Part shown: positions 1 to 38,153 of the stretch, piece after piece | How the letters are laid out: each line of letters starts with the position of its first letter | Numbering within the stretch: position 1 is the first letter of the stretch | DNA from: Macrostomum lignano | Lineage: Eukaryota | Reading direction: 5' to 3' | DNA: 64,000 bases | Assembly: GCA_002269645.1 (NCBI GenBank) | Contig: NIVC01003923.1 | Location: 1-64,000 of the forward strand | Notes under the pieces: generated by a model | Told to the model about the DNA's origin: nothing | What the model saw: the letters and a program-made list of their open reading frames with translations, nothing else | The model's database searches: none | Program-made: the position numbers and the translations under genes

Positions 1-95
1 AAAATGAGGAGCACCGGCCAGGGAGGGACTGGCGACGCGCGTCTTTTATAAACTGAAGCGAGCAGAGCTGAGCAGCAGCACTGCGAGACCGGCCC

Positions 96-2513: not shown

Positions 2514-5500
2514 ATGAACGCAACAGGCGCCAACACGAGCGACATGCACCTGCTGGACAAGCAGGGAGTGGAGCTGTCCGAGGACGAGTACCGATATGTA
2601 GTGAAGCACTACGATACCAACCTCATCTATCTGATTGGAATGCTGCTTCGATTCACCGTGAGACTCTTAATTTGCTTTCTCTGCTGTGTCTAGCGACTGG
2701 CATAAATGTGTGTATTTGTTTATTTACACACCTGTTAATGCGCCCAATTTGCAGTCCTTTCTGTCCAAGGCAGACTTGGCTTACCTGCCCGGAATCGACA
2801 GCGAACTGGGCGTCAATCAGGTAAGCAGTGCTGGCACCGGCCTCTCTTAATTACCAAGACTTAGCTAGACTGATGCCCCTGCCCGCAGATCACACAGGGA
2901 ATCTGGCCGGTGCTGCGCAGCTACAGAGATCAGCTGCTGCTGAAGCGGATGCTGGAACAGGACGGCTACAAGGAGAGCAGCCTATGCGCCAAAACTGGAC
3001 CGGTTGCTAGGGTCAGATCTGGCAGGGCGGTAAGTGGCAGGTGGGCCTGTATAGGGAAGTGATTCGCCGGGGCTGAGATGCTATTGTGGGCAGATACGAG
3101 TGTAGCAATGCATTAAGAAGAGTATGAAGGGTATGAAGGGTTATGACTAATCCCGTTGGTGGCGGTCTCCAATGTCAGACGCACTGCTTGCCAGCAGTCG
3201 AAAGTTGCATATTATGCAGCGCGTTCCTTCCTCAGAGGACAAAATGACGTCTAAAAGTAATGTTGTGCTATACATTGTTTTATCGCTGAAGGAAATACAA
3301 AAAATCGTAATTCCTTGAGTTAAGACACGAAGAAATGCACTGCAGCAGACAGAGATGACAGGAACGAAGACGCTATGACTGACACATCATTACACTATAA
3401 GCGATACTATGAAGCGAGACTATGACACTGCAATACTTTAGGAACAAAAATTATGGATATGTAAGCAGAGTTGCTGCATATTTAACCAAAATTTAACCAA
3501 CCATACCTACGTTTCTAACGATAAAATCCCATCAAAGCTTATGGATTAACCGTGGCAAGCCCGTGGAAAACCCCTCTAGGATGCTCGTCCGGAATCCGCC
3601 AGCGGCAACGGGCTGCGCATCGCCCAGATGCTACATTCGCACAGCCGCGACCTCTGCGACTCGCACACGGCGGCCAAGACCGTCCTGACGCAAGATGATC
3701 TTGGCCGCCACGTGGACTGCCTTCGCAATATTCGCGCCAAGAACCAGGTGCTGCCGCAGCCGTTCCCCAACGCGCTTTGCTCTCGGCGGCCAACCTCACC
3801 AACTTGGAGCTGTCGCGGTGCAAGATGCGCGACACCGGCTGGCTCAGCCAGATGTCCGAGGGCCTCATCAATCTGCAGTTGCACGAAAACTTCATCACTA
3901 AGCTGGACCCCAGCCTGAGCAGGCTGAAGCGTTTAAAGTTTCTCAACTTGAGCTACAATCCCATTAGCTACCTGCCTACCTTCGTCTGCGACCTGCCTTC
4001 GCTTTCGCTGCTGGACGCCAGCGGGACGCAGCTGAACCGCTTGCCGGAGGAGATTGGCCGCATGTCGGCGCTTACGAACCTCCTGCTAAAGGAGACGCTG
4101 ATCCGGCGCCTTCCAGCCGGATTCGGCCGGCTAAAGAAGCTCAAGCAGCTCAACTTGTCCGGCGTCCCGCTGCCCAAGATGTCTAAAAGTCGCGGCGGTC
4201 GCGGCGGCGGCGGTGGCGGCGGCGGCGGCGGCGGCAGCGATGGTGGCGGCGAGGGCGGCGGCGAGGGCAGCTCCGGAGAGGCTCCGCGGGCCCGGCGGAT
4301 CAGCCAGGCACAGCGCAGCCGGGGCGGCGGGGGCGGCGGCCTGGGCGCCGGGCTGATCATGTCCTACAAGGCCTGGTCCGAGTACCGCAACCACGGCTTC
4401 GCGGTGCAGAAGGCGCTGAAAGGCATCGGCGAGGAGCTGTTCGCCCGACACGACGTTAACAATGATAAAATCCTGCAGGCGCAGGAGCTGCAGAACTTCC
4501 TAGCCGAGCTGTTCGCCGTGGTGCCTCGTCTGTGCGTTGAGGACGGCGGCGGGCCGAGTGAGGCCGAGTTCCCGATGGAACTGCTGGGCTGCCGCAGCTT
4601 GGAGTCGCTGGTGCTCAGCAACCAGGGCATCCGGCGGGTGCCGCAGGAGATCTCGGCCCTCAAGCAGCTCCGGACCCTCGTACTGGACAACAATCTCTAC
4701 CTGGAGAGCGTCCAGGGCAACCTGCCGGAACTGAAAGGTATGGTGGCTGAGGAGCCTGCGTTGTCATGCACTCTTTCGACAGTAGAGATGGACGGGGAGA
4801 TGCGCAGTGAGGCGGGGCCGTCTCGGCAACAATAAAATAACATCGCGTGCTGGGGGAAGCGGATAAATGCAAACAGTGCAGATGAGGATTTCACAGAGCA
4901 TCTGGCTTCTGCATCAGCGCCAAGCTAGTTGCAATTTCAAAAGCCATGTCTGATTGTTTTTTCCAGTCTTTTCAAGGCTGGACTTACAAGCGTGTTGTGC
5001 ATTGGCAGATAAATGCGATGCAGTTAAAGTATAATTGAAGCCAAATACACAGGATACAAATGCATTCATCCTGGACCCCGGACAGACGTAGACAAGATGA
5101 GATAGAATAAGATAGATACGATATAGATGTCAGGCAGACACAAGCGGCAAGCCACATCGCAAAACTGCACTCCCCGCTACGTACCCGACCCTCAGTGCTG
5201 TCGATGCAGGGTTGCGAGAACCTGAAGACGCCGCCCCAGGAGATCCTGGCGCAGGGCATGATGGCCACCATCGCCTACCTTCGCCGACTGGCCAGCGGCA
5301 GTGTCGCCTGCTACCGCACCAAGCTCATGTTTGTCGGCCTGGGCGGCGCTGGGAAGACGAGGTGAGACTGGCCTAAACGGCTACTCATTTCACTTTGCAG
5401 TGGATTGAAAGTTTCGGTGTCTCTAAAAATAGAAACTAATAAATCGGCTTTGGAAATGGAATCTATTGTTACATCCATTGTTCATTGATGAATTGATGAA

Positions 5501-8500
5501 TTGTGACTAATGCACTGCCGTCTATTGAAGCTTGTACGAGTAACTTCACGCGACAGTCAGAGCCTCACGTTTCATGCCCAAATTGGAGCCAAAGCGTCAC
5601 TTAAGTTCTTCAAGTCAGTGTCAAAGCGTCACTTCACTGCTTCAAACCCCCAGAGTCAAATCGTCACTTCACTACTTCAAACCCCCACAGTCAAATCGTC
5701 ACTTCACTACTTCAAACCCCCACAGTCAAATCGTCACTTTACTAGCTCGTACTTCAAACCTCCAGAGTCAAATCGTCACTTTACTGCTTCAAACCCCCAG
5801 AGTCAAATCGTCACTTTACTGCTTCAAACCCCCAGAGTCAAATCGTCACTTTACTGCTTCAAACCCCCAGAGTCAAATCGTCACTTTACTGCTTCAAACC
5901 CCCAGAGTCAAATCGTCACTTTACTGCTTCAAACCCCCAGAGTCAAATCGTCACTTTACTGCTTCAAACCCCAGAGTCAAATCGTCACTTTACTGCTTCA
6001 AACCCCCAGAGTCAAATCGTCACTTTACTGCTTCAAACCCCCAGAGTCAAATCGTCACTTTACTGCTTCAAACCCCCAGAGTCAAATCGTCACTTTACTG
6101 CTTCAAACCCCCAGAGTCAAATCGTCACTTTACTGCTTCAAACCTCCAGAGTCAAATCGTCACTTTACTGCTTTAAACCTCCTGAGTCAAATCGTCACTT
6201 TACTGCTTCAAACCTCCAGAGTCAAATCGTCACTTTACTGCTTCAAACCTCCAGAGTCAAATCGTCACTTCACTGCTTCAAACCTCCTGAGTCAAATCGT
6301 CACTTTACTGCTTCAAACCTCCTGAATCAGAGTCGGTGCTCAAGGATCATAAGCTCCCGCCCCATCCCCGATCCCCGTCAGTCTCATGCGAGCCCTGATG
6401 TCGCCGGACTTCAAGGCGCCGCAAATTCGCCTGGAGGCCATCACGGATGGCATTGACATCAGCACATGGACAATCAACAGGTCAGGCCAGTCCGTCACCT
6501 TCAGCGTGTGGGACTTCGCCGGCCAGACGCTGTACTACAACACGCACCAGTTCTTCCTGACCGCCCGCGCCGTGTACCTGCTGGTGTGGAACATGCGGCT
6601 GGGCTTCGAGCACGCTGGCCTGGACTTCTGGATGAACAGCATCTCCTGCCACGCTCCCGGCGTGCCAATCTTTGTTGTGGGGACTCACTGCGACAAGGTG
6701 GCGAAGTTTGACATGCCAGTGCAGGATCTCAAGGATAAATATCCCGGAATTGTGGGATTCTTCTCAGTCAGCTCAGCGAGCGGAGAGGTGAGGCGTGAGG
6801 GAAACTGAATGCTTCAGATGGTCCAGTGAGAACTACTAAAAAGCCTGTGAATTCACTGAGAAGGTCTGCGAGTCCGGTAAAAGTCAGAGCGTCGTGTGGG
6901 AAGTTAGATTGTCCTGTACTGGGAGGTCAGATTGTCCAGTACTGGGAGGTCAGATTGTCCTATACTGGGAGGTTAGATTGTCCTGTACTGGGAGGTCAGA
7001 TTGTCCTGTACTGGGAGGTCAGATTGTCCTGTACTGGGAGGTCAGATTGTCCTGTACTGGGAGGTCAGATTGTCCTGTACTGGGAGGTCAGATTGTCCTG
7101 TACTGGGAGGTTAGATTGTCCTGTACTGGGAGGTCAGATTGTCCTGTACTGGGAGGTCAGAATGTACTGTACTAGGAGGTCAGAATGTACTGTACTGGGA
7201 GGTCAGATTGTCCTGTACTGGTAGGTCAGATTGTCCTGTACTGGGAGGTCAGATTGTCCTGTACTGGGAGGTCAGAATGTACTGTACTGGGAGGTCAGAA
7301 TGTACTGTACTGGGAGGTCAGAATGTACTGTATATGCCAAGTGCTTTTTTACGCGTAGAAGAATTTTTGAAGCGACGCGGGTTGAAAGTGATTGACAACC
7401 TGATACTGTAAAGCAACAGGTGCATTGCACAGAATAGTGTTTTGCTTTCACCTTCGGCTTACCTGAAACTTCTTTCTATTGATTTTTTAAATTCAGTCTT
7501 CGATACCCTTTCTCTGAGAATGTAAAAATAGTTCGTGTCTGACCTGCGCCCTGCTCCGCTCCGGTTTCTCATTGTATTAAAAGCACTTGATTGATTGATT
7601 GATTGATTGCCTGCTTGGCGGCCGCTCCTCATCGACTCTCACGGCGCAGCAGGGGGGGGGGGAGTGCCGGCCCGCGGCTCCACTCCCGCTAATAACGCGG
7701 ATTAACCCAGCACTGCACTAGCGGGCGGGAGTCGCCTTTTGGGCTCTTTGAAGTCGCAGCCTCCATCCGCTTAGGATGGAAGATTAAGGAGGCATCGGGG
7801 ATGCGAATTTCCTCATATCATTCCGCGTTTCAAGGGCTGAGCGAATCTGCAATCCCATTTAGATTTTCTTTGTCGCTCTCAGGGAGACTCTAAGACAGAT
7901 GTGGAATTTGCGTGAACTCCGAGGATCCGGAATCTGGGAACCGGGATCTGGTTACCCGAGGCGCAACTTGAGAGCCTGCAGGGAGGGGGATCGGGCTAAT
8001 GCATCATCTCTGATTGAAGGCCACTGCAAGGCGTGTGATCGTGCTATTTGATTTGCGAGTCGAGAGGAGGTCTGTTTAGAAATGCTAGCGCCAGCCGGTA
8101 TTCACCAAAATTTCACGAGAATAATTTGGTGATATTCCGCAAAGCACATCAGCTAAATATAGCTCGTAGGTATGAATTTATCTGATTTTAGCCTGAAATT
8201 GACAATATTTTGCCTTTTTGGACTTTCCAATTTGCAGATAAAGCAAGTATGGCTGTTGTCATTGCTGATGTAAAATTTATGGCAAATTTCTGATAGAGAG
8301 AAATCCAGCCAGCCCGAAATCGGACATCCAAACTTGCGCGCTGTCTATGGCCCAACCTGCCTTTACTCTGTAGGATTCCAACATTGGATGTTTTCTTGTA
8401 AAAAACTGGAATCTTTTCAGTACTTTCAAACTTTCTAGCTTAGCAAAACAAAAGCAATAATAAAAACGATCGGCTGCCTTTAAACCGTGTTGAAAAGCAA

Positions 8501-10473
8501 AAAAAAAACAAAAATTGATGCAGAGCTCCGGAGTCGACTTTCACAGAATTGACAGCTTCAACAAATTTGAAATATGGGTTCATTTTCAATGGGATTTATT
8601 ATGAGAGTTGCGCGAGAAATTTGTTGAGAAATCTGCTGATCCTCTCCATTCTCTACAGCCGTTTAATCAGCGGAAGCAGGTTTCGCAATTAATTAAATTG
8701 CAGGCAAGACAAGAAGCATTATTTTACAAATCCAATTCCGCGAATTCCAGTTTACATTTCCCTCATCAGGAGGCTGCAGTCTACTGGAGTTTACGAGCGT
8801 ACGCCAGTCAGTAGTGTCAGTGACGTTATCAGAGAGATTAGGATTAGACAGAGATTGCTCTGGTAAGTGGATCTAAGAGATTATATGGATTAGAGAGAGA
8901 TTATATGGATTAGAGAGAGATTAGATGGATTAGGGAGAGATTAGATAAATAAGAGAGAGATTAGATAGATTAGAGCGGGGTTAGATGGATTGGATAGATG
9001 AGAAAATAATAAGAGAGATTATATGGATTAGAGAGAGATTAAATGGACGAGAGAGAGATTCGGTGGATTAGAAAGAGATTAGATGGATGAGAGATAGAGA
9101 GATTCGGCCGATTAGAACGAGATCAGATGGATTAGAGAGAGATAGAGAGAGAGATTCGGCGAATTCGAGAAAGATTAGACGGATGAGAGATAGAGAGATT
9201 CGGTGGATTAGAGAGAGATTCGGCGGATTAGAACGAGATTAGATGGATTAAAGAGAGATTAGATGGATGAATTAGAGAGAGATTCGGTGGATTGTAACGA
9301 GATTAGGTGGATTAGAGAGAGACCGGACGGAATAGATGGATCAGACAGTAATGAGAGAGATTAGGGGCAGTGCATGGATACTTTAGTGGGTTCAAAGCGG
9401 CTGAGAGAGGCCATCAAATGCCTGAGGAGGCTGCTGATTGCTCCCTGCTTGCTTGGACTGGCTAAAAGAAGCAGACAGGCCAAGATTGTAGCAATATTGA
9501 GCGATCAGCTCTGCCTTCAACAGCTTCTGCCTGCTTCATCTGGCCTAGAAAAAAGCCAAATCGGCCTCCTCGAGCAGAGTCTAAATTTAACTTTAGCACG
9601 AGAGCCAACCCCCCCCCCCAAGTTGCGTTTTATTAAAAACATCAATCTGGTTTACTTCAGCCAAGCTGCTGTGCATCCAGTTCTCAGTTTCTGCTCACAG
9701 GTGAACAGGACTTAAGATATTCTCACATTCATTTCCAACATTGAAAATCCGCTGAAAAAATGTCTGAAAAAGACACGACAAAATGACATTTGAGGAAAGA
9801 AAGAAAGTTTCAAGCGCAATAAACTTCTACTGCAAGCAGACCTCTAGCTTGGATTGTACGCGGTTGCTGAGCACTTGAATTCGCGTCTAACTGGGCCGGG
9901 TGCAACTCGGTCAATCTCCGATATGTATCGAAAACAATCGAAAACTAAGAGTCCGATTGGGAGGAGAGCGGGAAAAAGGGGAAGAGTGAGGATGACCGGG
10001 AGGGAGACGGGGAGAGGGGGAGAGGAGAGGGAAGGAGAGGGAGAGAGAGGAAAGTGAATGAAGAGCTTCCACCGTGACATCAATAAAGTTGCCACTAAGC
10101 AGGCAGCCCGGAGACTATATTTGCACTCAGTTGTACCTTCGGCCCGGCCGCACTATCGCAGTCGTGGCCAACCCATCAAATTTTTCTTTTTCTGTCTGAG
10201 CGACTGATGGGAGGCCTCCCCGCTCTCATCACACGCGGCGCGGCGAAGGACAGTCGCTCAAGCCAGCTGGGCCGCGAATTCCGTCAAAGTGTCCCCGATT
10301 GTCCCCTCATGAATAAAACATCGGCGCAGACTCGAGTAAAAACGCTCAAACGACGAGTCGAGTCGCTGGGCGCCAGATCTCCGTCAGTAATTCCTACTTT
10401 CTCGCTACGGCCCAGACAGTCGTTGTGAGGATAAAACTGGAGCTGGCGATGAAGATTTGAGCCGGACCGACTC

Positions 10474-10508
<35 letters not shown>

Positions 10509-19500: not shown

Positions 19501-22500
19501 ACGACAGGAAGAACGCGCAGGTGATCATCTGCGGGCGCAGGGGGCTGTCGAAGGCCTGGCGGCCGGCGTCGGCCATCACGGTCAGCATGACGGTGAGGTT
19601 GACAGCGAAGCCGATGTTCAGCACAGTCTCCGACAGGGACAGCAGCAGCAGCAGGCGGCCCATGATGACATTTTTCTTGTCCAGAATGAATACTATGAGG
19701 GAGAAACCGTTGGTCAGGGCGTTCAGGTAGCTCAGAACGCAAGCGATGTACAAATAGACGTTGGCGGCGCCGCCAGCGGGGCCTTCCGAGCTGCCGGAGT
19801 CGTTCAGGCAGCTGCCGTTGACAGCCACATAGGCGAGCATCGCTGCTGAGCTGAGCTGATTCTCACTGAACTGAACTGGGAGCTGAGAATCGAACCTGAG
19901 CAGTCCGCTGGTTGGCCTTCTCGGCTCTCCGCCCTGATGGATTTTTCTAGTCCTCCACTTCAGCGAAGTCTCAGCCTCCGCCAATCCGCCCCCGGCTCGC
20001 TTGTCCTTCACAGCCAATGGCCGGGCTCCCAGACAACAGCTGGGCACTTTAATCTGTCGGATTTGGCAGCGGCTCAAAATCCAGTTTTAAATCCTTTAAA
20101 GCTGTTTGAAGTCTCAAGGCTGACATCAAACTGTCGTATTGCTTTTGCAGCTCATCCATAATGCACCACGCACAATAGGCTAATGAAAATGAACGAAGCA
20201 CTGTACCAAGGCTCTGGACGGCTTATGGCTCAGATGGGATTAAGGACTTGAAATTAGGGAATTCGCCCTTTCTGTCTGATTGAATCATGCGGTTCTCCTC
20301 AGGTCAAAGGGAGCCGCCAACTTCATGGGAGATTTGCGTCAGCCTGACCGCCTGTTCTGATTCCGCTTTTGCTGCCAAACTTTCTTCGAGCTAATTATAA
20401 AAGCATGAGCAAGCTCGACAACACTGCTGGATGTACTTTTAAAATATTACTGGCTTATTTTTATAAGCCAGTGTTTTACTAGCAATTGTTATTAAAATCT
20501 GCGGGTCAGTGCACCCCCTGGGAGAGGTGTTTGCCGCCTAATTAATCAGATTCTTATCCGAGCGGTAAGATACGGATGACGCTGTCGAAATTGCTGGCAT
20601 AATTGCACTGCTCCGCATCCGTGCATTTTTGTTGAAGGAAATCCCAAGCCTAGGTGGTAATGAGAGACTTCGCGACTTTGGGAATAATAATGTGTGCGCT
20701 AATTCAAAAGTGTTAAGTCTTGATCCAAACTAATCCCTGAGTAAGAGTTCCGTGATCACCTTCTTGTGCATGCCGTTCATTGCAAACGGCACAGTCAATA
20801 ACACCTTACAGTCCATGCACCTGACACAATGAAGTACGTGACTCGCACAATACCTCACACAGTTCTCAAAATTCATCACACACCTCACACAACCCATCAC
20901 ACACCTCACACAACCCATCACACACCTCACAGAACCCATCACCTCATCACCTCAAAACCCACCACACACACCTTACACAACCCACCATACACCTTAAAAC
21001 CTATCACACACCTCAAAACCCATCACACAACTCAAAATCCATCACACACACCTCAAAACCCATCACACACCTCAAAACCCATCACACACCTCAAAACCCA
21101 TCACACACCTCAAAACCCATCACACACACCTCAAAACCCATCACACACCTCAAAACCCATCACACACCTCAAAACCCATCACACACCTCAAAACCCATCA
21201 CACACCTCAAAACCCATCACACACCTCAAAACCCATCACACACACCTCAAAACCCATCACACACCTCAAAACCCATCACACACCTCAAAACCCATCACAC
21301 ACACCTCAAAACCCATCACACACACCTCAAAACCCGTCACACACCTCAAAACCCATCACACACACCTCAAAACCCATCACACACACCTCAAAACCCGTCA
21401 CACACCTCAAAACCCATCACACACACCTCAAAACCCATCACACACCTCAAAACCCATCACACACACCTCAAAACCCATCACACACCTCAAAACCCATCAC
21501 ACACCTCAAAACCCATCACACACCTCAAAACCCATCACACACACCTCAAAACCCATCACACACACCTCAAAACCCGTCACACACCTCAAAACCCATCACA
21601 CACACCTCAAAACCCATCACACACCTCAAAACCCATCACACACACCTCAAAACCCATCACACACCTCAAAACCCATCACACACACCTCAAAACCCATCAC
21701 ACACACCTCAAAACCCATCACACACACACACCTCAAAACCCATCACACACACCTCAAACAAACCATGACGCACCTCAAACAACCAATCACACCTCACATA
21801 GCCGTCGCACACCTCACACAACTCATCACACACATCGCAACCTATCGCGCACCTCAAACAACCAATCACACCTCACATAGCCCGTCGCACACCTCACACA
21901 ACTCATCACACACATCGCAACCTATCGCGCACCTCACCCGCAGCGGGTCAGCGGGCGCGCAGACGTGTTCATCAGCTACTGCTGGGCGAACTCGCAGGAG
22001 GCGGTCAAGGCAGGCCACGGCAAGGCCACCAGCCGCTCCATCGGGTTTGGCGATCCCCGGAAACTCAAGAAGCACCTGGAGGAAGCCGGCGGCCTTTCCT
22101 GCTGGATTGACATCGAACGGCTGGGCGAGAACGGCATGTTTGAGGACCTCTGCCAGGGACTCAAGGCCTGCAAGCTGGTGGTGGCCTGCCTCTCCGATGA
22201 GGTGAGAACTGCTCGCGACTTTTGGCATTAGAATGCATGCTTTTGATTACGAGCGTATTATTCAACTCTAAATATTTGCAGCTCACTGTGAATCTCTACA
22301 GCTCACTGTGAGTTTATGCAGCTCACTGTGAATCTCTGCAGATCACTGTGAATCTCTGCAGCTCACTGTGAATCTCTGCAGCTCACTGTAAATCTCTGCA
22401 GCTCACTGTGAATTTATGCAGCCCCTATTAGCGCAAAAAATATCGCTTGCAAAATCATCCGCAATGCTTTCTGAAGCTAAAAGTACAAAAACTTTTCCCC

Positions 22501-25500
22501 AATCGCAGTACGTGGCATCGAAGAACTGCCAGATGGAGTATCGCTTTGCTCACCTGACGCTCAACCGGCCCATGGTGATCTGCGTTGTGGGCACCGGCGT
22601 GCTGTGGGAGTCCACTGAGGTGAGCGGGGGCGACTGCGGAGTCTGGGGGGGGGCAGTTGGAACTCGAACGGGAGATAAGGAATGGGAACTGAGGTATGAG
22701 ATGAGAGCAGAGATGAAGTGAGAAACTTAGCTGAGAGGAGAAATGACATGAAGGTAGAAACAGGTGAGAGTAAAATGAGATGAAAAGCGGAGGAAACAGG
22801 TGAGAGTAAAATGAGATGAAAAGCGGAGGAAACAGGTGAGAGTGAAATGAGATGAAGGGAGAACAGGTGAGAGTGAAATAAGATGAAGGGAGGAACATGT
22901 AAGAGTGAAATTAGATGAAGGGAGGAACATGTAAGAGTGAAATTAGATGAAGGTAGAAGGAACAGGTGAGAGGAGAAATGAGATGAAGGTAGAAACAGGT
23001 GAGAGTGAAATGAGATGAAGGGAGGAGGAACAGGTGAGAGTGAAATGAGAAGGGAGGAACAGGTGAGAGGAGAAATGAGAAGGGAGGAACAGGTGAGGGG
23101 AACAGGTGAGAGGAGAAATGAGAAGGGAGAAACAGGTGAGAGGAGAAATGAGAAGGGAGAAACAGGTGAGAGGAGAAATGAGAAGGGAGGAACAGGTGAG
23201 AGGAGAAATGAGAAGGGAGAAACAGGTGAGAGGAGAAGTGAGAAGGGAGGAACAGGTGAGAGGAACAGGTGAGAGGAGAAGTGAGAAGGGAGGAACAGGT
23301 GAGAGGAACAGGTGAGAGGAGAAGTGAGAAGGGAGGAACAGGTGAGAGGAACAGGTGAGAGGAGAAGTGAGAGGAGAAATGAGAAGGGAGGAACAGGTGA
23401 GGGGAGAAATGAGAAGGGAGGAACAGGTGAGAGGAGAAATGAGAAGGGAGGAACAGGTGAGGGGAGAAATGAGAAGGGAGGAACAGGTGAGGGGAGAAAT
23501 GAGAAGGGAGGAACAGGTGAGAGGAGAAATGAGAAGGGAGGAACAGGTGAGAGTGAAATGAGAAGGGAGGAACAGGTGAGGGGAGAAATGAGAAGGGAGG
23601 AACAGGTGAGAGGAGAAATGAGAAGGGAGGAACAGGTGAGAGGAGAAATGAGAAGGGAGGAGCCAGTGAAAAGTGAAAGGAGTGAGGAAAAGGTGAAATA
23701 AGATACAAAGTGGCTGGAAAGAAGGAAAGCGGAAATCGATTCCCAGGACAGTGGAAACTATGAAACGAGGTTTTCACTCAGTCCCAGTTCAGGTGGCCCT
23801 GCAGTGGGGTCTCGGCCCAGCTTAGCATAAATCTTCTTTCAGCGCATCGCAGCCCGGCAGCCACCCACACGCAAGCAGCCGGACTGCTTTTGGCTTTGGT
23901 CTGACCCTTATGTGAAATTTTTCCTTAACGTGAGATTCGATGCACTTTAATTCGAATCCGCTGTTTCATGTTTTTTTATAAATTCTGAAAGCAGTCTTAG
24001 ATAAATAAACTAAAGAACTTGAAATCTGGTGAGATTGGTATCTAATCTAGAGATATTGATATCTAGTCTAGTGAGATTAGCATCTAGTCTAGTGAGATTA
24101 GCATCTAGTCTGGTGAGATTGGCATCTAGTCTAGTGAGATTAGCATCTAGTCTAGTGAGATTGGCATCTAGTCTAGTGAGATTAGGATCTAGTCTAGTGA
24201 GATCTAGTCTAGTGAGATTGGTATCGAGTCTAGTGAGATTGGCATCTAGTCTAGTGAGATTAGCCTCTATTCTAGTGAGATTGGCATCTAGTCTAGTGAG
24301 ATTAGCCTCTATTCTAGTGAGATTGGCATCTAGTCTAGTGAGATTAGTCTCTATTCTAGTGAGATTGGCATCTAGTCTAGTGAGATTAGTCTCTATTCTA
24401 GTGAGATTGGTATCTAGTCTAGTGAGATTGGTATCTAGTCTAGTGAGATTGGTATCTAGTCTAGTGAGATTGGTATCTAGTCTAGTGAGATTGGTATCTA
24501 GTCTAGTGAGATTGGTATCTAGTCCAGTGAGATTGGTATCTAGTCTAGTGAGATTGGTATCTAGTCTAGTGAGATTGGCATCTAGTCTAGTGAGATTGGT
24601 ATCTAGTCTAGTGAGATTGGTATCTAGTCTAGTAAGATTGGTATCTAGTCTAGTGAGATTGGTATCTGTGGTGTCTCAACAGACTATCACGGGAAACACG
24701 AGTACGTGGCAGGTAAGACTTTTGCCGGAAAAAAAAGGTACGAGCTCCACTTAGGGCAACCCGCGCTTATATTTGATATTTAACAGTAAATTGTTACACG
24801 ATCGATAAATTCAACCGCCAAAATGTCACGTGATTAAAAATACGTTTCACAATACAATATACGAATTATTTATTAACTGCATTACTTAAAGTAGAGTAGT
24901 AAGAAAAAGTAAGAAAAGGTTAGTTAGACGAACGGCCCTTTTACGGGCTCCTTGTCACGACACAACAGTATCTAGTCTAGTGAGATTGGTATCTAGTCTA
25001 GTGAGATTGGTATCTAGTCTAGTGAGATTGGTATCTAGTCTAGTGAGATTGGTATCTAGTCTAGTGAGATTGGTATCTAGTCTAGTGAGATTGGTATCTA
25101 GTCTAGTGAGATTGGTATCTAGTCTAGTGAGATTGGTATCTAGTCTAGTGAGATTGGTATCTAGTCTAGTGAGATTGGTATCTAGTCTAGTGAGATTGGT
25201 ATCTAGTCTAGTGAGATTGGTATCTAGTCTAGTGAGATTGGTATCTAGTCTAGTGAGATTGGTATCTAGTCTAGTGAGATTGGTATCTAGTCTAGTGAGA
25301 TTGGTATCTAGTCTAGTGAGATTGGTATCTAGTCTAGTGAGATTGGTATCTAGTCTAGTGAGATTGGTATCTAGTCTAGTGAGATTGGTATCTAGTCTAG
25401 TGAGATTGGTATCTAGTCTAGTGAGATTGGCATCTAGTCTAGTGAGATTGGTATCTAGTCTAGTGAGATTGGTATCTAGTCTAGTGAGATTGGTATCTAG

Positions 25501-27665
25501 TCTAGTGAGATTGGTATCTAGTCTAGTAAGATTGGTATCTAGTCTAGTGAGATTGGTATCTAGTCTAGTGAGATTGGCATCTAGTCTAGTGAGATTGGTA
25601 TCTAGTCTAGTGAGATTGGCATCTAGTCTAGTGAGATTGGTATCTAGTCTAGTGAGATTGGCATCTAGTCTAGTGAGATTGGTATCTAGTCTAGTGAGAT
25701 TGGTATCTAGTCTAGTGAGATTGAGAAAAGCATCTAATCTACCGAACCGACAACCCCGGCAGATCGGCATGATGTCGCTCGGTCATCCAAAGGTGAACTT
25801 CCAAGCTGCCAGCGAATCCTGCTACGACGCTCTGCTGAGCGCGGTGACGGAGACGCTGGAGAGGTACTACCCCATCAAACGGCCGGACAGCAAGGACAGT
25901 CTCCGCAAGCGGCGCAAAAGCAGCCTGAGCAGTCCGGGCGGAGGTGGCGCCATGTTCCAGGTGATGCGTTTTCTCTTGACTGGTTACCTATCTAGTACGA
26001 GATAATGATGGAGAGACAATGATTTTCTGGGGGGCTAGGGGCGCCCTGACGCAGCTTCGGTGACAACTGTCACAGTAAATGAGCACTCAAGCGCGTCAAT
26101 GTTGTACGCAGACACGCACTCATGCACACTGGGTGCACAGCGGCTCCTGACTGAAAACCGGCATGATATCCGAAAAACTACTTATAGTAGAAAGTAAATA
26201 AATAACTGTTATTTTTTCTGTTCCTAATTGGAAAACTGTCAAACATGGCTACAGGAACTGATCGAGCTCGCCCAGCGCAAAGTCTACCGCCAGTTCTCCG
26301 GATTTCTCGACACGGCCGAGCAGTTTCCCTGCCTCATCGTGGCCGACATCTATACTGACTCTGTGAGTAGGCTCTGCCATTTCCCAGTCTACCATTTCCC
26401 AGTCTACCATTTCCCAGTCTACCATTTCCCAGTCTACCATTTCCCAGTCTACCATTTCCCAGTCTACCATTTCCCAGTCTACCATTTCCCAGTCTACCAT
26501 TTCCCAGTCTACCATTTCCCAGTCTACCATTTCCCAGTCTACCATTTCCCAGTCTACCATTTCCCAGTCTACCATTTCCCAGTCTACCATTTCCCAGTCT
26601 ACCATTTCCCAGTCTACCATTTCCCAGTCTACCATTTCCCAATCTACCATTTCCCAATCTACTATTTCCCAATCTACCGTTTTAGTCTGCCCGACAAGCT
26701 CTCCATCAATTTCCCAACCAATCATCCCTGTCGTCTCGGCCACTCCGCAGGACAACCCGGCCGGCAGCCCGGACAAGGCCGAGTTCTCCGCCGTGGCCGC
26801 CTTCGCCGACGACGCGGCCGCGGACGAGCCGCCGTTGTCTGACGACGGCGTCGAGGACGAGCCCCGCTTCCAGTTCCGGTTCCGCCTGCTCTGCGAGCAC
26901 GAGGGCGGCTGGCACGCGGCCCCAGGCGCCGGCCTGCCGCTCCGCCTCGGCCGGGATGCCGCCCTGCAGCTGCTGGGAGGCCTGGCGCCGCTGCTGCTCC
27001 GCCTGGCGTTGGTCCTCCGGCACAGCCGGCGCTCCGGCCTGGACACCGCGGCCGACCTCGTGGCCGGCGGCCGCCTGCTCGACCACCTGCGCGCGGCAGC
27101 TGAGCGCGCCGGGCCCGAGGCCGACCTGCGTCAGCTGCACGCGGCGCTGCGCCAGCACCTGCGCCGCCGGGACCCGGGCATCGCTGCCGGCCTACGCCGC
27201 TGCCACCTGCCGTCAGGAAAAATCCTCTGGCTGTGCCCGGAGCACCAGAGCCAGCCGAGGACCGTCGTGCTGGCGGACGCCACCACGGCCGTCCCTGCTG
27301 CTGACGCTGGTGACACTGCGGAGGACGAGGAGGAGGAGCTGCTGGCGCAGGTGCTGTCGGTGGTCGGCAGCGGCGCCGTCGCGTCTGTCGCTGCTGAATC
27401 GGCGGCTGCCGAGGCGGCCGAGCAGTCCAGCTCCAAGCGCAAGCTGGCCGTCGCTGGCCTCGGCCGCATCGACGAAGCCGTCGAGTCGCCGGAGCCGTCG
27501 GCCTCGGCTGCGTCCTCCGCTGCGGCGGCGGCGGCTGCGACGGCGGCGACACCCGTGAAGGATGCGCGGCAAGGCAGAGTCAACAGCCCCCCGGGCGTCA
27601 GGAAGCGGCCATTCAGCGCGCCGGCCGGGCAGGGCCAGAAGAGCCGCGCCTGCCAGCTGCTGTGA
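2514..27665 (+). CDS. ROCO-family protein without kinase: LRR(+EF-hand)-Roc GTPase-COR-TIR-TIR-Cys/His domain-CaaX, ~1717 aa, 19 exons
   Basis: Hand-built join(2514..2657,2755..2820,2889..3029,3580..4737,5196..5361,6382..6787,10810..10916,10994..11072,11858..12004,13531..13889,13986..14133,14205..14322,15709..15898,17218..17551,21944..22201,22509..22619,25763..25960,26255..26362,26751..27665). All introns are GT-AG and all phases are compatible if one base is missing near 3777. Roc motifs: GLGGAGKTS, ITDGIDI, WDFAGQ..YYNTHQFFLT, VGTHCD. COR: VPEAW, FLHDMG, VIINPQWL, VPCLLP, YLPAGLF. TIR: DVFISYCW..CWIDIE..SKNCQMEY. Confidence 0.85.
5600..6325. repeat. 35-bp minisatellite (ROCO intron 5)
   Basis: Unit GCTTCAAACCCCCAGAGTCAAATCGTCACTTTACT, ~20 copies. 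Confidence 0.95.
6893..7332. repeat. 23-bp minisatellite (ROCO intron 6)
   Basis: Unit TGGGAGGTCAGATTGTCCTGTAC, with variant GGTCAGAATGTACTGTAC. Confidence 0.95.
8870..9365. repeat. Degenerate purine-rich tandem repeat
   Basis: Recurring GATTAGAGAGAGATTAGATG / GAGATTCGG motifs. Confidence 0.8.
11100..11820. repeat. 12-bp minisatellite (ROCO intron 8)
   Basis: Units AGCAGGATTAAC / AGCAGGGTTAGC; source of the spurious SRIN and LLIL ORFs. Confidence 0.95.
12088..12628. repeat. 30-bp minisatellite (ROCO intron 9)
   Basis: Unit TGAGCACAAAGTCGAGTAGCTGTTGACCAT, ~18 copies. Confidence 0.95.
13204..13448 (-). mobile_element. tRNA-derived SINE, family A, copy 1
   Basis: Minus strand has A-box-like TAGCCTAGAGG and B-box GGTTCGATTCC, then GTGTCCTTGAGCAAGACACTT..CAGTTCACCCAACTGTAAAATGGG resembling the MIR/CORE-type central domain; second copy at 59064-59316. 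Confidence 0.8.
14628..15345. repeat. 55-bp minisatellite (ROCO intron 12)
   Basis: Unit TCAGCATTGGGGCTGGACAACCGTCAGACAGTCAGTCCACAGTGCACACAGATAC, ~13 copies. Confidence 0.95.
15883..16795 (+). repeat. 44/47-bp tandem array duplicating the exon 13/intron 13 junction of the ROCO gene
   Basis: Unit (GATA)CTGCCGGCTTATCTGT|GTGAGTATAGCAAGCGGCAGAGTTGAA, ~20 copies; the first copy is the real exon end plus donor. Confidence 0.95.
18569..19840 (-). CDS. Class A (rhodopsin-like) GPCR, peptide/FMRFamide-receptor-like, intronless, nested antisense in ROCO intron 14 (423 aa from ATG 19840)
   Basis: Seven hydrophobic segments; N-terminal N-glycosylation sequons (NGS, NDS); TM3 RNWSLVMIAGSRC (DRY variant); TM4 APRLFE; TM6 FIICELP; TM7 NFIIY. 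The upstream in-frame start at 20077 lacks receptor-like sequence. Confidence 0.85.
   Translation of the reverse strand: MLAYVAVNGSCLNDSGSSEGPAGGAANVYLYIACVLSYLNALTNGFSLIVFILDKKNVIMGRLLLLLSLSETVLNIGFAVNLTVMLTVMADAGRQAFDSPLRPQMITCAFFLSFAIANAFIMVRNWSLVMIAGSRCEVVSNPFSTRRGQLFSHRRSQACYALTLILSLLVCAPRLFEFTWTICEYPAENNSTETTVYSLTTATHHILDKNPSYRHYKTLLVFPLQTIAPIFLISGLSLVIIFILRRRRLLQQNSGGSAGSGSGRGGGGASGSGSRSQDAATKTVMILMFSFIICELPTFLFFILNQTIFASMRGFNQIRMHTTFLANILLSADSFTNFIIYSSTSNTFRETVRQMLHLPDRRQGRSNNYNYNNNHLQNNNYSMLSREANALRRAEAAAAATAAPSHIEDAALAPLKWHPGGAD
20872..21920. repeat. 19/21-bp CA-rich minisatellite
   Basis: Unit CACACCTCAAAACCCATCA(CA), degenerating towards the acceptor at 21943. Confidence 0.95.
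22275..22420. repeat. 20-bp minisatellite (ROCO intron 15)
   Basis: Unit GCAGCTCACTGTGAATCTCT, ~7 copies. Confidence 0.9.
22700..23680. repeat. Purine-rich ~30-bp minisatellite
   Basis: Unit GAGGAGAAATGAGAAGGGAGGAACAGGTGA and variants. Confidence 0.9.
24025..24666. repeat. 21-bp minisatellite, left part
   Basis: Unit TCTAGTCTAGTGAGATTGGTA; interrupted at 24667 by a solo LTR. Confidence 0.95.
24667..24967. mobile_element. Solo LTR (301 bp) inserted in the 21-bp minisatellite
   Basis: Termini TGTGGTGTC...GACACAACA (TG..CA, 8/9 inverted match), flanked by the 5-bp direct repeat GTATC (24662-24666, 24968-24972); subterminal AACGGCCCTTTTACGGG resembles the large LTR. Confidence 0.75.
24968..25725. 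repeat. 21-bp minisatellite, right part
   Basis: Near-perfect TCTAGTCTAGTGAGATTGGTA copies ending ~35 bp before exon 17. Confidence 0.95.
26378..26680. repeat. 15-bp minisatellite (ROCO intron 18) with acceptor-like units
   Basis: Unit CCATTTCCCAGTCTA, ~20 copies, starting ~15 bp after the donor at 26363. Confidence 0.95.

Positions 27666-29461: not shown

Positions 29462-38153
<8,692 letters not shown>

What the first reader, a model, noticed from the sequence alone, without database searches (positions are those of the whole stretch)
2514..27665. Kinase-less ROCO protein with NLR/TLR-like architecture: (CARD?)-LRR/EF-hand-Roc-COR-TIR-TIR-Cys/His domain-CaaX
Seen in sequence: a phase-consistent 19-exon model with intact Roc G-motifs, a full COR region and two TIR-like blocks where LRRK1/2 have a kinase. 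Established: Roc-COR is a GTP-regulated module; TIR domains signal by self-association and some (SARM1, plant and bacterial TIRs) cleave NAD+. Inference: one polypeptide could combine sensor (LRR), Ca2+ input, nucleotide switch, effector (TIR) and membrane anchor, i.e. a GTPase-switched innate-immune or cell-death receptor analogous to NLRs. Roco-TIR fusions exist in bacteria and probably some invertebrates, so novelty of this exact combination is unverified.
Basis: partly seen in the sequence, partly recalled or inferred. Interest (0 to 1): 0.8.

Follow-up and report, generated by a model that had tools for sequence, protein, structure and literature searches.

The report
Flatworm kinase-less ROCO GTPase with TIRs
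The region encodes the C-terminal ~1,700 residues of a real, selected gene of the flatworm Macrostomum lignano: a GTPase-switch (ROCO) protein carrying two TIR immune-signalling domains and a lipid-anchor signal. It belongs to a widespread but functionally unstudied invertebrate family, so it is a good candidate rather than a new kind of gene.

Summary
Window 2514-27665 (+) carries a GT-AG, phase-consistent gene encoding LRR - EF-hand-like loop - LRR - Roc - COR-A - COR-B - TIR1 - TIR2 - a conserved Cys/His C-terminal domain - CaaX (CQLL).

GenBank PAA56038.1 of Macrostomum lignano matches my model from the Roc P-loop to CQLL without a gap. That includes the TIR1|TIR2 junction, which spans an intron holding an antisense GPCR gene.

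Three corrections:
- The gene starts upstream of the window. About 1,374 more residues are spliced to an acceptor at 2527, giving roughly 3,090 aa in total, so ATG 2514 is probably not the start.
- The window lacks one base at 3773. The 19-exon/1717-aa count needs that base restored.
- No support was found for a CARD.

Orthologues at 40-50% identity with the same order, including the C-terminal domain and CaaX, occur in hemichordates, brachiopods, molluscs, annelids, rotifers and a nematode. ROCO+TIR proteins have been catalogued in silico in Trichoplax and Aplysia, and the family is probably 'ecTIR-DC 14'. I found no functional study.

TIR2 keeps an invariant Glu at the catalytic position of NADase TIRs; TIR1 does not.

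The most likely mechanism is a prenyl-anchored, GTP-gated TIR effector. This is inferred, not shown.

Verdict: new member of a known kind, moderate interest.

The parts
2514..2657 (+). First exon inside the window. ATG at 2514 is the start used by UniProt A0A1I8FWE5. An internal acceptor makes the exon start at 2527 in the long annotated forms (..LQWS|ANTSDMHLL..). It encodes the start of a helical region with no family match.
   Evidence: tblastn of P0002/P0003 starts at 2529. Pfam finds nothing in aa 1-173.
2755..2820 (+). Exon encoding SFLSKADLAYLPGIDSELGVNQ, phase 0/0.
   Evidence: 100% match to P0002/P0003. Splice sites shown.
2889..3029 (+).
   Evidence: No CARD or Death hit.
3580..4737 (+). 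Large exon encoding LRR block 1, a Gly-rich low-complexity stretch, the EF-hand-like loop (DVNNDKILQAQE, model aa 388-399) and LRR block 2. The window lacks 1 nt at 3773. My model B bridges this with a 62-nt intron (3748-3809). Annotated proteins read straight through (..RAKNQVLPQPFPNAALLSAANLTNLE..).
   Evidence: LRR_8 E 2e-14, LRR_14 E 1e-16, EF-hand_6 E 0.036.
5196..5361 (+). Exon encoding the last LRR and the Roc P-loop (GLGGAGKT).
6382..6787 (+). Exon encoding the Roc GTPase core: switch I TDGIDI, DFAGQ, THCD, SSAS.
   Evidence: Pfam Roc E 1.8e-21. Motif conservation. PDB best match is LRRK2 Roc-COR, E 4e-34.
10810..12004 (+). Three exons (10810-10916, 10994-11072, 11858-12004) encoding the end of Roc and COR-A.
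   Evidence: Pfam COR-A E 3.4e-31. Junctions identical to PAA56038.1.
13531..14322 (+). Three exons (13531-13889, 13986-14133, 14205-14322) encoding the end of COR-A and COR-B.
   Evidence: Pfam COR-B E 3.9e-27..
15709..17551 (+). Two exons (15709-15898, 17218-17551) encoding TIR1 (model aa about 1023-1160). This TIR is degenerate: the catalytic-position residue is Tyr here and varies among orthologues.
   Evidence: TIR_2 33.4 bits, E 7e-8. AF2 gives a full beta-alpha TIR topology with pLDDT mostly above 90. Alignment.
21944..25960 (+). Three exons (21944-22201, 22509-22619, 25763-25960) encoding TIR2 (model aa about 1172-1325). Glu1263 (CQMEYRF) is invariant. Strand betaE and helix alphaE are encoded by the third exon.
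   Evidence: TIR_2 49.9 bits. AF2. Foldseek hits SARM1, MyD88, Hydra TRR-2 and TLR1 TIRs at probability 1.00. The profile hits Cat1, plant TIR NADases and TLRs, with E1263 aligned to the E of CLDEL/CWDEL. Invariance shown.
26255..27665 (+). Two exons (26255-26362, 26751-27665). They encode a conserved helix (ELxELxQRKFLRQ), an acidic linker, the Cys/His C-terminal domain (C1440, E1441, W1446, H1447 ... C1543, G1548, K1549, W1552, C1554, H1557), an Ala/Ser-rich tail, the CaaX box CQLL (27651-27662) and the stop (27663-27665).
   Evidence: P0075 and P0256 confirm the junctions. The domain is found only in this family. AF2 pLDDT is 70 overall and 80-94 in the core. No PDB or BFVD fold match. CaaX statistics.

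Best explanation
**What it is.** The window holds the 3' two-thirds of a functional Macrostomum lignano gene for a very large (about 3,090 aa) cytosolic, kinase-less ROCO protein. It belongs to a conserved invertebrate family, probably 'ecTIR-DC 14'.

**Domain order.**
1. A conserved N-terminal extension, encoded outside the window.
2. An unassigned helical region.
3. LRRs, a single EF-hand-like loop, then more LRRs.
4. Roc GTPase, COR-A and COR-B.
5. TIR1, which is degenerate.
6. TIR2, with an invariant Glu at the NADase catalytic position.
7. A family-specific Cys/His domain.
8. A disordered tail ending in CaaX.

**Shown here.**
- The gene structure.
- The domain identities.
- The intact GTP-binding motifs.
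- Conservation of every module, including the CaaX.
- Purifying selection on the coding exons.

**Inferred mechanism.**
- The CaaX cysteine is prenylated and tethers the protein to a membrane.
- The LRRs, perhaps with Ca2+ at the EF-hand loop, receive an input.
- As in LRRK2 and bacterial Roco proteins, the Roc-COR module acts as a nucleotide-dependent dimerisation and conformation switch.
- That switch controls self-association of the tandem TIRs.
- TIR1 serves as a non-catalytic assembly partner.
- TIR2 is the effector. The most likely output is SARM1-like NAD+ cleavage, causing NAD+ depletion or an ADPR-type signal. Otherwise it acts by recruiting TIR adaptors.

An innate-immune, stress or cell-death role is the most likely context, in an animal reported to have no TLRs.
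For: **Gene model**
- Built and checked.
- Gap-free identity to PAA56038.1 over aa 530-1696.
- P0001 and P0002 join TIR1 to TIR2.

**Selection**
- 16 of 16 exon differences from the second copy are synonymous.

**Domains**
- Pfam assignments.
- Roc-COR is closest to LRRK2 and prokaryotic Roco structures.
- G motifs are conserved.

**TIR folds**
- AF2 pLDDT 82.7 with two complete TIR topologies.
- Foldseek probability 1.00 to SARM1, MyD88, TRR-2 and TLR1 TIRs. SARM1 chains give the highest identity, 20-22%.

**Catalytic position**
- E1263 is invariant in 17 to 34 aligned sequences.
- It aligns with the Glu of CWDEL in Cat1 and CLDEL in a plant ADP-ribosyl cyclase TIR.
- TIR1 lacks it.

**Family**
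- Orthologues at 40-50% identity over 99% of Roc-to-TIR2, across six or more phyla.
- They share the C-terminal domain and CaaX.
- 33 of 39 domain-bearing proteins with a tail of at least 60 aa end in C-x-x-x.

**Long form**
- Upstream exons are collinear in L001.
- The N-terminal extension is homologous to the N-termini of 2,500-3,300-aa family members.

**Context**
- M. lignano has 0 TLRs (PMC8609888).
Against: **Nothing biochemical was tested.** GTP binding, prenylation, Ca2+ binding, Zn binding and NADase activity are all inferred.

**Against the NADase reading specifically**
- The Glu at this position is also present in non-enzymatic TLR TIRs. TLR1 and TLR6 are among the profile hits. Its conservation therefore does not prove catalysis.
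- The Trp that usually precedes it (WC..E) is Asn here.

**Other weaknesses**
- A single-sequence search of the TIRs against PDB sequences found nothing.
- The EF-hand loop has Lys at position 6 and is sub-threshold in Pfam.
- AF2 pTM for the TIR pair is only 0.53, so the relative arrangement of the two TIRs is unknown.
- The window copy carries a 1-nt frame break at 3773.
- No expression or phenotype data were available.
Confidence: 0.6

Rival explanations
1. There are two genes. A ROCO-TIR1 gene ends after 17551, and a separate TIR2 + Cys/His-domain + CaaX gene starts near 21900. The antisense GPCR gene between them would mark an intergenic region.
For: A complete 502-aa GPCR ORF lies at 18569..20077 on the minus strand between the two TIR blocks. 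The older UniProt models are fragmented: P0001 and P0002 stop at ..LWEST, and P0075 starts at exon 18.
Against: - P0001, P0002 and PAA56038.1 all read ..GAGKRE|RVSGRADVF.. across this intron.
- About 30 orthologues from other phyla have TIR1 and TIR2 contiguous in one protein.
- There is no in-frame Met upstream of TIR2 in its exon.
- A second nested antisense gene (TTL-like) sits in another intron of the same gene, so nesting is normal here.
Confidence: 0.03
2. The gene is the same, but the TIRs are purely scaffolding domains, as in MyD88, MAL and TLRs. GTP-dependent oligomerisation would nucleate a TIR signalosome that recruits MyD88- or SARM-type adaptors and activates TRAF/MAPK/NF-kB-like signalling, with no NAD+ chemistry.
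For: - MyD88, MAL, TLR1/2 and Hydra TRR-2 TIRs match the fold as well as SARM1 does (TMt 0.6-0.79).
- TLR1, TLR6 and MyD88 are among the profile hits.
- The conserved Glu is also found in TLR TIRs.
- The literature treats ecTIR-DC proteins as putative adaptors or regulators (PMC6321704).
- Planarians have a MyD88 (PMC7958881).
Against: - The best sequence-profile hits are enzymatic TIRs: Cat1 at E 1.6e-7, then plant ADP-ribosyl cyclase TIRs.
- Identity is highest to SARM1.
- Absolute invariance of E1263, set against free variation at the same site in TIR1, suggests a catalytic rather than structural constraint.
- The family thrives in TLR-less rotifers and flatworms.
Confidence: 0.3
3. This window copy is a decaying duplicate, that is, a pseudogene. 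M. lignano carries several near-identical copies, and this one has a frameshift at 3773.
For: There is a 1-nt deletion relative to L001 and to all annotated proteins. The genome holds at least two or three copies.
Against: - 16 of 16 coding differences from L001 are synonymous, and there are no stops in 5.1 kb of CDS.
- L001 has its own 1-nt indel at window position 4321, in a G-rich run. This points to assembly indel errors rather than biology.
- All 19 splice-site pairs are intact.
Confidence: 0.08
4. The protein has a non-immune role. It could be a membrane-trafficking, cytoskeletal or neuronal-maintenance regulator, as LRRK2 is for Rab and vesicle biology and SARM1 is for axon degeneration, with the TIRs acting as a metabolic sensor.
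For: Roc-COR is closest to LRRK2. A CaaX membrane anchor, an EF-hand loop, and MBT or PLAT domains in long orthologues are not typical immune modules. SARM1's best-known function is neuronal.
Against: There is no direct evidence either way. LRR plus tandem TIR is the classic sensor-effector pairing. Rotifers and molluscs carry several paralogues, which is typical of immune genes.
Confidence: 0.2

Closest known systems
Invertebrate 'ecTIR-DC 14' / ROCO-TIR proteins. Trichoplax has ~3,000-aa LRR+TIR proteins (Kamm 2019, PMC6321704, citing Gerdol 2017) and ROCO genes with MBT/LRR/CARD/TIR (Civiero 2014, PMC4104024). Aplysia has 'TLRs' with ROC-COR plus an EF-hand or MBT (PMC9334734).
   Same: - Size of about 3,000 aa.
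- No conserved transmembrane segment.
- LRR plus Roc-COR plus TIR, with an EF-hand or MBT accessory.
- Direct orthologues at 40-50% identity were retrieved here from Aplysia, Lingula, bivalves, Glandiceps and others.
   Different: - The mapping to the name 'ecTIR-DC 14' could not be checked, because Gerdol 2017 is not in the library.
- In the papers I could read I found no description of the conserved Cys/His C-terminal domain, the CaaX box, or the catalytic-Glu asymmetry between TIR1 and TIR2.
- The M. lignano N-terminal extension gives no Pfam MBT or PLAT hit.
Human MFHAS1 (MASL1), LRRK1/LRRK2 and DAPK1, the vertebrate ROCO proteins
   Same: - LRR-Roc-COR core.
- G4 motif THxD, as in LRRK2.
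- Best PDB sequence match is LRRK2 Roc-COR (E 4e-34).
- Like MFHAS1, it has no kinase.
   Different: - Two TIRs, a Cys/His domain and CaaX follow COR, where LRRK has kinase-WD40, DAPK1 has a death domain, and MFHAS1 has nothing comparable.
- It is not orthologous to any of them. The family was not seen in vertebrates among the hits.
SARM1, the metazoan TIR NADase
   Same: - TIR2 fold match at probability 1.00, TMt 0.62-0.71 and 20-22% identity.
- Conserved Glu at the E642-equivalent position. This equivalence is from my own knowledge of SARM1 plus the alignment to CLDEL/CWDEL TIRs.
- The TIR is held under control of an N-terminal regulatory region.
   Different: - The regulator is Roc-COR with LRRs, not ARM-SAM.
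- The TIRs are in tandem.
- It has a prenylation signal rather than a mitochondrial targeting sequence.
- NADase activity is untested.
Bacterial LRR-Roc-COR-TIR proteins, for example Calothrix sp. NIES-2100 (P0010) and metagenomic P0015, P0157 and P0160-P0162
   Same: The same LRR-Roc-COR-TIR order in one polypeptide.
   Different: - Only 23-28% identity.
- A single TIR.
- No EF-hand loop, no Cys/His domain and no CaaX.
- The flatworm gene has 19 spliceosomal introns and clear animal orthologues, so it is not a recent transfer.
Plant TNL and animal NLR receptors (STAND NTPase switches with LRR sensors)
   Same: The functional logic is the same: an LRR sensor, a nucleotide switch and an oligomerising effector (a TIR in TNLs). 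RPP1 and Roq1 TIRs appear among the hits.
   Different: The switch is a Ras-like GTPase with COR, not a NACHT or NB-ARC STAND ATPase. The domain order is reversed, with the TIRs C-terminal. This is an analogy only.
Death-Roc-COR-TIR(-Neuralized) proteins of echinoderms, bivalves and nemerteans (P0166, P0170, P0177, P0178, P0181)
   Same: They are kinase-less ROCO proteins with a TIR, and several also end in CaaX (CTIL).
   Different: Only 27-30% identity over Roc-COR. They have a Death domain in place of the LRRs. They form a separate family.

Membership tests
ROCO proteins | A Roc (Ras-of-complex) GTPase immediately followed by a COR domain | tested here: met
   Pfam Roc E 1.8e-21, COR-A E 3.4e-31 and COR-B E 3.9e-27, contiguous over aa 525-991. 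PDB LRRK2 Roc-COR E 4e-34.
ROCO proteins | Intact nucleotide-binding motifs G1-G5 | tested here: met
   GLGGAGKTS, TDGIDI, DFAGQ, THCD and SSAS are present and conserved in orthologues. GTP binding itself was not assayed.
LRRK / DAPK-type ROCO kinases | A protein kinase domain in the same polypeptide | tested here: not met
   No Pkinase hit in the 1696-aa model, in P0002, or in the N-terminal extension. The database name 'non-specific serine/threonine protein kinase' is a misnomer.
TIR domain proteins | A TIR fold: five-stranded parallel sheet with alternating helices | tested here: met
   Both blocks exceed the Pfam TIR_2 gathering score. AF2 gives two complete betaA-alphaE topologies. Foldseek probability 1.00 to solved TIRs.
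NADase-type TIRs (SARM1, plant TNL TIRs, bacterial and CRISPR Cat1 TIRs) | A catalytic Glu in the alphaC motif (C-x-x-E-L) | tested here: met
   TIR2 E1263 is invariant and aligns with the Glu of CWDEL/CLDEL. TIR1 has Tyr there, and the site varies among orthologues. The same Glu also occurs in non-enzymatic TLR TIRs, so this feature is necessary but not sufficient.
NADase-type TIRs (SARM1, plant TNL TIRs, bacterial and CRISPR Cat1 TIRs) | Measured NAD+ hydrolase or cyclase activity | not testable with these tools
   This needs a recombinant protein assay.
Toll-like receptors | Extracellular LRR ectodomain, a single transmembrane helix and one cytosolic TIR | tested here: not met
   No conserved transmembrane segment. 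The only Kyte-Doolittle peak (1.96, aa 1463-1481) is a core helix of the C-terminal domain that carries Arg, Lys or His in orthologues. Roc-COR lies between the LRRs and the TIRs. A signal peptide was not tested, because the true N-terminus is outside the window.
NLR / STAND receptors | A NACHT or NB-ARC STAND NTPase domain | tested here: not met
   No such Pfam hit.
CARD / death-fold domain at the N-terminus | Sequence or fold match to CARD, DD, DED or PYD | tested here: not met
   No Pfam, NCBIfam or PDB-sequence match for aa 1-173. No similarity to other family members. Fold prediction was not possible, so a cryptic helical bundle is not excluded.
EF-hand Ca2+-binding proteins | A canonical 12-residue loop (D-x-[DN]-x-[DNS]-G-x-[ILV]-x-x-x-E) flanked by helices, usually in pairs | tested here: inconclusive
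   The loop DVNNDKILQAQE has ligand positions 1, 3, 5 and 12 but Lys at position 6. Pfam EF-hand_6 E 0.036, below threshold. Orthologues have canonical loops such as DVDHNGVLTWKE. There is only one loop and no partner.
CaaX-prenylated proteins | Cys at position -4 from the C-terminus, in a flexible tail | tested here: met
   The protein ends CQLL after a low-complexity tail. 33 of 39 family proteins with a tail of at least 60 aa end in C-x-x-x, for example CVII, CVIM, CSVM, CVLQ and CTVM. Prenylation itself was not assayed.
ecTIR-DC 14 (Gerdol et al. 2017 classification) | The family definition in the original paper | not testable with these tools
   The paper is not held in the library. The link rests on the description in PMC6321704 (about 3,000 aa, LRR+TIR, no transmembrane segment, several other domains) and on the Trichoplax ROCO list in PMC4104024.

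The most novel reading that the evidence does not exclude
This ~3,000-aa prenylated LRR-EF-Roc-COR-TIR-TIR-CHCH family may be an ancient metazoan, membrane-tethered cytosolic sensor. In this reading, GTP- and Ca2+-gated TIR2 NADase activity triggers NAD+ depletion or an ADPR-type second messenger, a SARM1-like or TNL-like death or alarm switch built on a Ras-like GTPase instead of a STAND ATPase. The family would then supply the LRR+TIR recognition function in phyla that lost TLRs, such as flatworms and rotifers. Its Cys/His C-terminal domain would be a new Zn-binding fold that couples the TIRs to the membrane.
Probability: 0.2. Interest if true: 0.75.

Novelty: new member of a known kind. Interest (0 to 1): 0.42.

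Why it matters
**The open question.** Flatworms, including M. lignano, have no Toll-like receptors (PMC8609888), and how they sense microbes or damage is unknown. This gene is one of the few LRR+TIR proteins they have.

**Why it is testable.**
- The family is conserved from placozoans or hemichordates to molluscs, but I found no functional study of it.
- M. lignano supports RNAi and transgenesis, so the hypotheses can be tested directly.
- Specific targets are the GTP switch (K536/T537), the TIR2 Glu (E1263), the prenyl anchor (C1693) and the Cys/His residues (C1440, H1447, C1554, H1557).

**What a positive result would mean.** If TIR2 is an NADase, this would be a third independent way, after ARM-SAM in SARM1 and STAND NTPases in plant TNLs and bacterial systems, of putting a TIR enzyme under nucleotide-switch control.

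**Practical corrections to public annotation.**
- The entries are split into four or more fragments.
- They are misnamed as kinases or 'DNA_mis_repair'.
- The window itself carries a probable 1-nt assembly error.

Tried and rejected
1. **First exon 19 boundary.** My first model started exon 19 at 26231 (ENCQTWLQ..). That site has no AG, so I moved the start to 26255. P0075 and P0256 later confirmed the change.
2. **Frame change near 3770.** I modelled it as a 62-nt intron (3748-3809). Comparison with L001 and three annotated proteins shows a 1-nt deletion in the window is the better explanation.
3. **Whole-protein homology search.** It was swamped by LRR proteins and made the gene look like an orphan outside Macrostomum. 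Repeating it without the LRRs revealed the family.
4. **C-terminal region, word-based search.** It found only the M. lignano fragment. The exhaustive HMMER search found 65 relatives, all within this family. There is no Pfam or NCBIfam model and no PDB or BFVD fold match.
5. **CARD hypothesis.** No hit by Pfam, NCBIfam, PDB sequences or family comparison. A similarity to the Lingula N-terminus that I saw by eye was not supported by phmmer.
6. As a result the N-terminal region and Roc-COR were not modelled.
7. **Single-sequence search of the TIRs against PDB.** It found nothing. The profile search did.
8. **N-terminal extension.** It looked by eye like a degenerate GTPase/COR. Pfam finds nothing, so I make no claim.
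9. **Literature.** Searches for any ROCO+TIR NADase study returned nothing.


Full report
**Origin and gene model**

Six-frame inspection gave a + strand model from 2514 to 27665. All introns are GT-AG and all phases are compatible. The model has 20 exons and encodes 1696 aa.

The first homology search showed that the window comes from the free-living flatworm Macrostomum lignano. UniProt A0A1I8FWE5 (P0001), UniProt A0A1I8J1V0 (P0002) and GenBank PAA49830.1 (P0003) match most exons at 100% identity.

The decisive confirmation came later. GenBank PAA56038.1 (P0256, 1167 aa) is collinear with model residues 530-1696, with no gap and only 7 substitutions. Every junction from the Roc P-loop exon to the stop codon is therefore independently annotated. 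That includes the junction across the 4.4-kb intron between the two TIR blocks (17551|21944) and the one across the repeat-filled intron 22620-25762.

A second genomic copy, L001 (contig NIVC01003779.1), is 96-98% identical and overlaps window 1-14649. It differs from the window at 16 exon positions. All 16 are synonymous third-position changes. This confirms the reading frames and shows purifying selection.

1. **A frame break at 3773.** The window lacks one base at 3773 relative to L001 and to all annotated proteins, which read ..RAKNQVLPQPFPNAALLSAANLTNLE...
- With that base restored, 3580-4737 is a single exon. In the window as given, the frame breaks there.
   - L001 has its own single-base indel at window position 4321, in a G-rich run.
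   - The 16:0 synonymous ratio argues against decay. I therefore read both indels as assembly errors and not as pseudogenisation.

2. **The gene begins upstream of the window.**
   - P0002, P0003 and PAA49605.1 (P0255, 1755 aa) join about 1,374 further residues to an acceptor that places the exon start at 2527 (..LQWS|ANTSDMHLL..).
   - In L001 these residues are encoded by at least 12 collinear exons. The last ends about 560 nt before window position 1.
   - The intervening intron contains an antisense TTL-family gene (window 96..1703).
   - Residues 9-220 of this extension are homologous (E 1e-10 to 1e-16) to the N-termini of 2,500-3,300-aa family members from other animals. Those members carry MBT or PLAT domains ahead of the same LRR-Roc-COR-TIR-TIR core.
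   - The full protein is therefore about 3,090 aa, and ATG 2514 is probably not the true start. A short isoform cannot be excluded.

3. **No CARD.** The '(CARD?)' region (aa 1-173) has no match in Pfam, NCBIfam or PDB sequences, and none to other family members.

**Domains**

Pfam results, with aa numbers for the 1696-aa model:

| Domain | Position (aa) | Score |
|---|---|---|
| LRRs | 192-292 and 435-489 | LRR_8 E 2e-14, LRR_14 E 1e-16 |
| EF-hand_6 | 382-406 | E 0.036, sub-threshold |
| Roc | 525-642 | E 1.8e-21 |
| COR-A | 697-833 | E 3.4e-31 |
| COR-B | 854-991 | E 3.9e-27 |
| TIR1 (TIR_2) | about 1023-1160 | 33.4 bits |
| TIR2 (TIR_2) | about 1172-1325 | 49.9 bits |

Both TIR scores are above the 28-bit cut-off. 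No kinase, NACHT or death-fold domain was found in the window model, in P0002 or in the N-terminal extension.

The Roc motifs G1-G5 are intact and conserved. The closest solved relatives of Roc-COR are LRRK2 (E 4e-34) and prokaryotic Roco proteins.

The EF-hand-like loop DVNNDKILQAQE keeps ligand positions 1, 3, 5 and 12 but has Lys at position 6. Orthologues have canonical loops such as DVDHNGVLTWKE and DEDSNGLLDEKE. There is only one loop.

**The TIR pair**

An AlphaFold2 model of exons 14-19, built with 34 aligned sequences, has mean pLDDT 82.7. It shows two complete betaA-alphaE TIR topologies. In TIR2 the last strand and helix are encoded by exon 18, with pLDDT 89-96. This independently ties that exon to the preceding ones.

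Foldseek against the PDB returns the following at probability 1.00:
- SARM1 TIR (TMt 0.62-0.71, 20-22% identity)
- MyD88
- Hydra TRR-2
- TLR1 and TLR2
- MAL

A profile of TIR2 orthologues hits the following:
- The CRISPR-associated TIR Cat1 (E 1.6e-7)
- A plant ADP-ribosyl cyclase TIR
- RPP1
- TLR6 and TLR1
- MyD88

In those alignments the family's invariant Glu (E1263, in CQMEYRF) lies on the Glu of CWDEL/CLDEL. From my own knowledge of plant TIRs and SARM1 E642, that is the catalytic residue of NADase TIRs.

E1263 is invariant in every alignment made. The equivalent site in TIR1 is Tyr here and varies freely among orthologues. The two TIRs are related by an internal duplication (34% identity).

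The same Glu also occurs in TLR TIRs. Its presence is therefore necessary for catalysis but does not prove it.

**C-terminal domain and CaaX**

After TIR2 comes an invariant helix (ELxELxQRKFLRQ..PRLxxxD), then an acidic disordered linker, then a domain with these conserved residues:
- Invariant: C1440, E1441, W1446, H1447
- At least 90% conserved: G1548, K1549, W1552, C1554, H1557
- Mostly conserved: C1543

An exhaustive HMMER search of 1.8 billion representatives found 65 relatives. Every relative whose domains or flanks I examined belongs to this ROCO-TIR family. The AF2 model has mean pLDDT 70, with core blocks at 80-94. It has no significant match in the PDB or BFVD. The four invariant or near-invariant Cys/His residues could bind Zn; this is inference only.

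The protein ends in CQLL. Of 62 proteins carrying the domain, 33 end in C-x-x-x. Among those with a tail of at least 60 residues the figure is 33 of 39. Examples are CVII in Glandiceps, CVIM in Lingula, CSVM in Sinanodonta and Capitella, and CVLQ in Aplysia. A subgroup with a short ~40-aa tail lacks it; the named members are from the rotifer Brachionus.

There is no conserved transmembrane segment.

**Family and literature**

The LRR-free query retrieved proteins at 40-50% identity over 99% of Roc-to-TIR2. The taxa are:
- A hemichordate (Glandiceps)
- A brachiopod (Lingula)
- Bivalves
- Gastropods, including Aplysia LOC106011403
- Annelids
- Rotifers
- The nematode Plectus

Bacterial LRR-Roc-COR-TIR proteins, such as the one from Calothrix, are far more distant (23-28% identity).

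What the literature already says:
- Civiero et al. 2014 (PMC4104024) listed Trichoplax ROCO genes with MBT, LRR, CARD and TIR domains.
- Kamm et al. 2019 (PMC6321704) describe two ~3,000-aa LRR+TIR Trichoplax proteins without a transmembrane domain, classed as 'ecTIR-DC 14 II' after Gerdol et al. 2017. They describe ecTIR-DC proteins as widespread in invertebrates and absent from vertebrates.
- The Aplysia immunome paper (PMC9334734) notes 'TLRs' with ROC-COR plus an EF-hand or MBT.

I found no functional study. M. lignano is reported to have no TLRs (PMC8609888), and flatworms and rotifers in general lack them (PMC7958881).

**Mechanism**

Shown here:
- One selected gene.
- An intact GTPase.
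- Tandem TIRs with an asymmetric catalytic-site signature.
- A family-specific Cys/His domain.
- A conserved prenylation signal.

Inferred:
- The protein is a prenyl-anchored, nucleotide-gated TIR effector.
- The LRRs, and possibly Ca2+, provide the input.
- Roc-COR provides the switch and dimerisation step, by analogy with LRRK2 and bacterial Roco proteins.
- TIR1 acts as a non-catalytic partner.
- TIR2 gives the output.

My probabilities for the output are about 0.45 for NAD+ cleavage and about 0.3 for pure scaffolding.

The two-gene rival is essentially excluded. The pseudogene rival is unlikely.

**Verdict**

This is a new, well-resolved member of a known but uncharacterised family.

Noticed in passing
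window 18569..20077 (- strand): An intact, intronless 502-aa rhodopsin-family GPCR ORF (Pfam 7TM_GPCR_Srw 1e-14, 7tm_1 4e-12). It is nested antisense in the intron between the TIR1 and TIR2 exons.
   Followed up: partly
window 96..1703 (- strand): A 535-aa tubulin-tyrosine-ligase family ORF (PF03133, E 4.5e-23). It is nested antisense in the intron that links the off-window upstream exons to the acceptor at 2527. The same gene is annotated in L001 at 10242..11873.
   Followed up: partly
window 5616-6319, 6897-7332, 11103-11839, 12074-12627, 14630-15342, 15882-16796, 20865-21937, 22710-23661, 24025-25723, 26373-26682: Almost every intron of the gene is filled by one minisatellite array, with periods of 15-55 nt and 12-81 copies. 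The 47-nt array at 15882-16796 starts 17 nt inside exon 14, so its GTGAGT donor is repeated about 20 times. The 15-nt array at 26373-26682 repeats an acceptor-like TTTCCCAG about 20 times.
   Followed up: partly
window 3773; window 4321 (versus L001): The two assemblies or copies carry different single-base indels inside the same coding exon: the window lacks 1 nt at 3773, and L001 lacks 1 nt at 4321. Both lie in GC-rich runs. They are probably long-read assembly errors, and they have fragmented the public protein models.
   Followed up: yes
window 29421..32294 (- strand): A 957-aa ORF with about three internal ~170-aa Cys-containing repeats, many N-x-S/T sites and a PPDTTS-type repeat tail. 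It has no Pfam family. It looks like a secreted or mucin-like glycoprotein exon.
   Followed up: no
L001 1-9583 (upstream of the window); P0255 aa 16-1389: The ~1,374-aa N-terminal extension of the same gene has no Pfam domain. Its first ~220 residues are conserved in long orthologues, which carry MBT or PLAT domains further along. By eye it contains GTPase-like and COR-A-like stretches; this is unverified.
   Followed up: partly
related proteins P0166, P0170, P0177, P0178, P0181: A second kinase-less ROCO-TIR family (Death-Roc-COR-TIR plus a Neuralized domain) occurs in sea urchins, bivalves and a nemertean. Several members also end in a CaaX-like CTIL. Cnidarian versions (P0176, P0188) add a kinase.
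   Followed up: no
public annotation of this gene: UniProt names the fragments 'non-specific serine/threonine protein kinase' (A0A1I8FWE5, A0A1I8J1V0) and 'DNA_mis_repair domain-containing protein' (A0A1I8J1W7). No kinase or mismatch-repair domain is detectable.
   Followed up: yes
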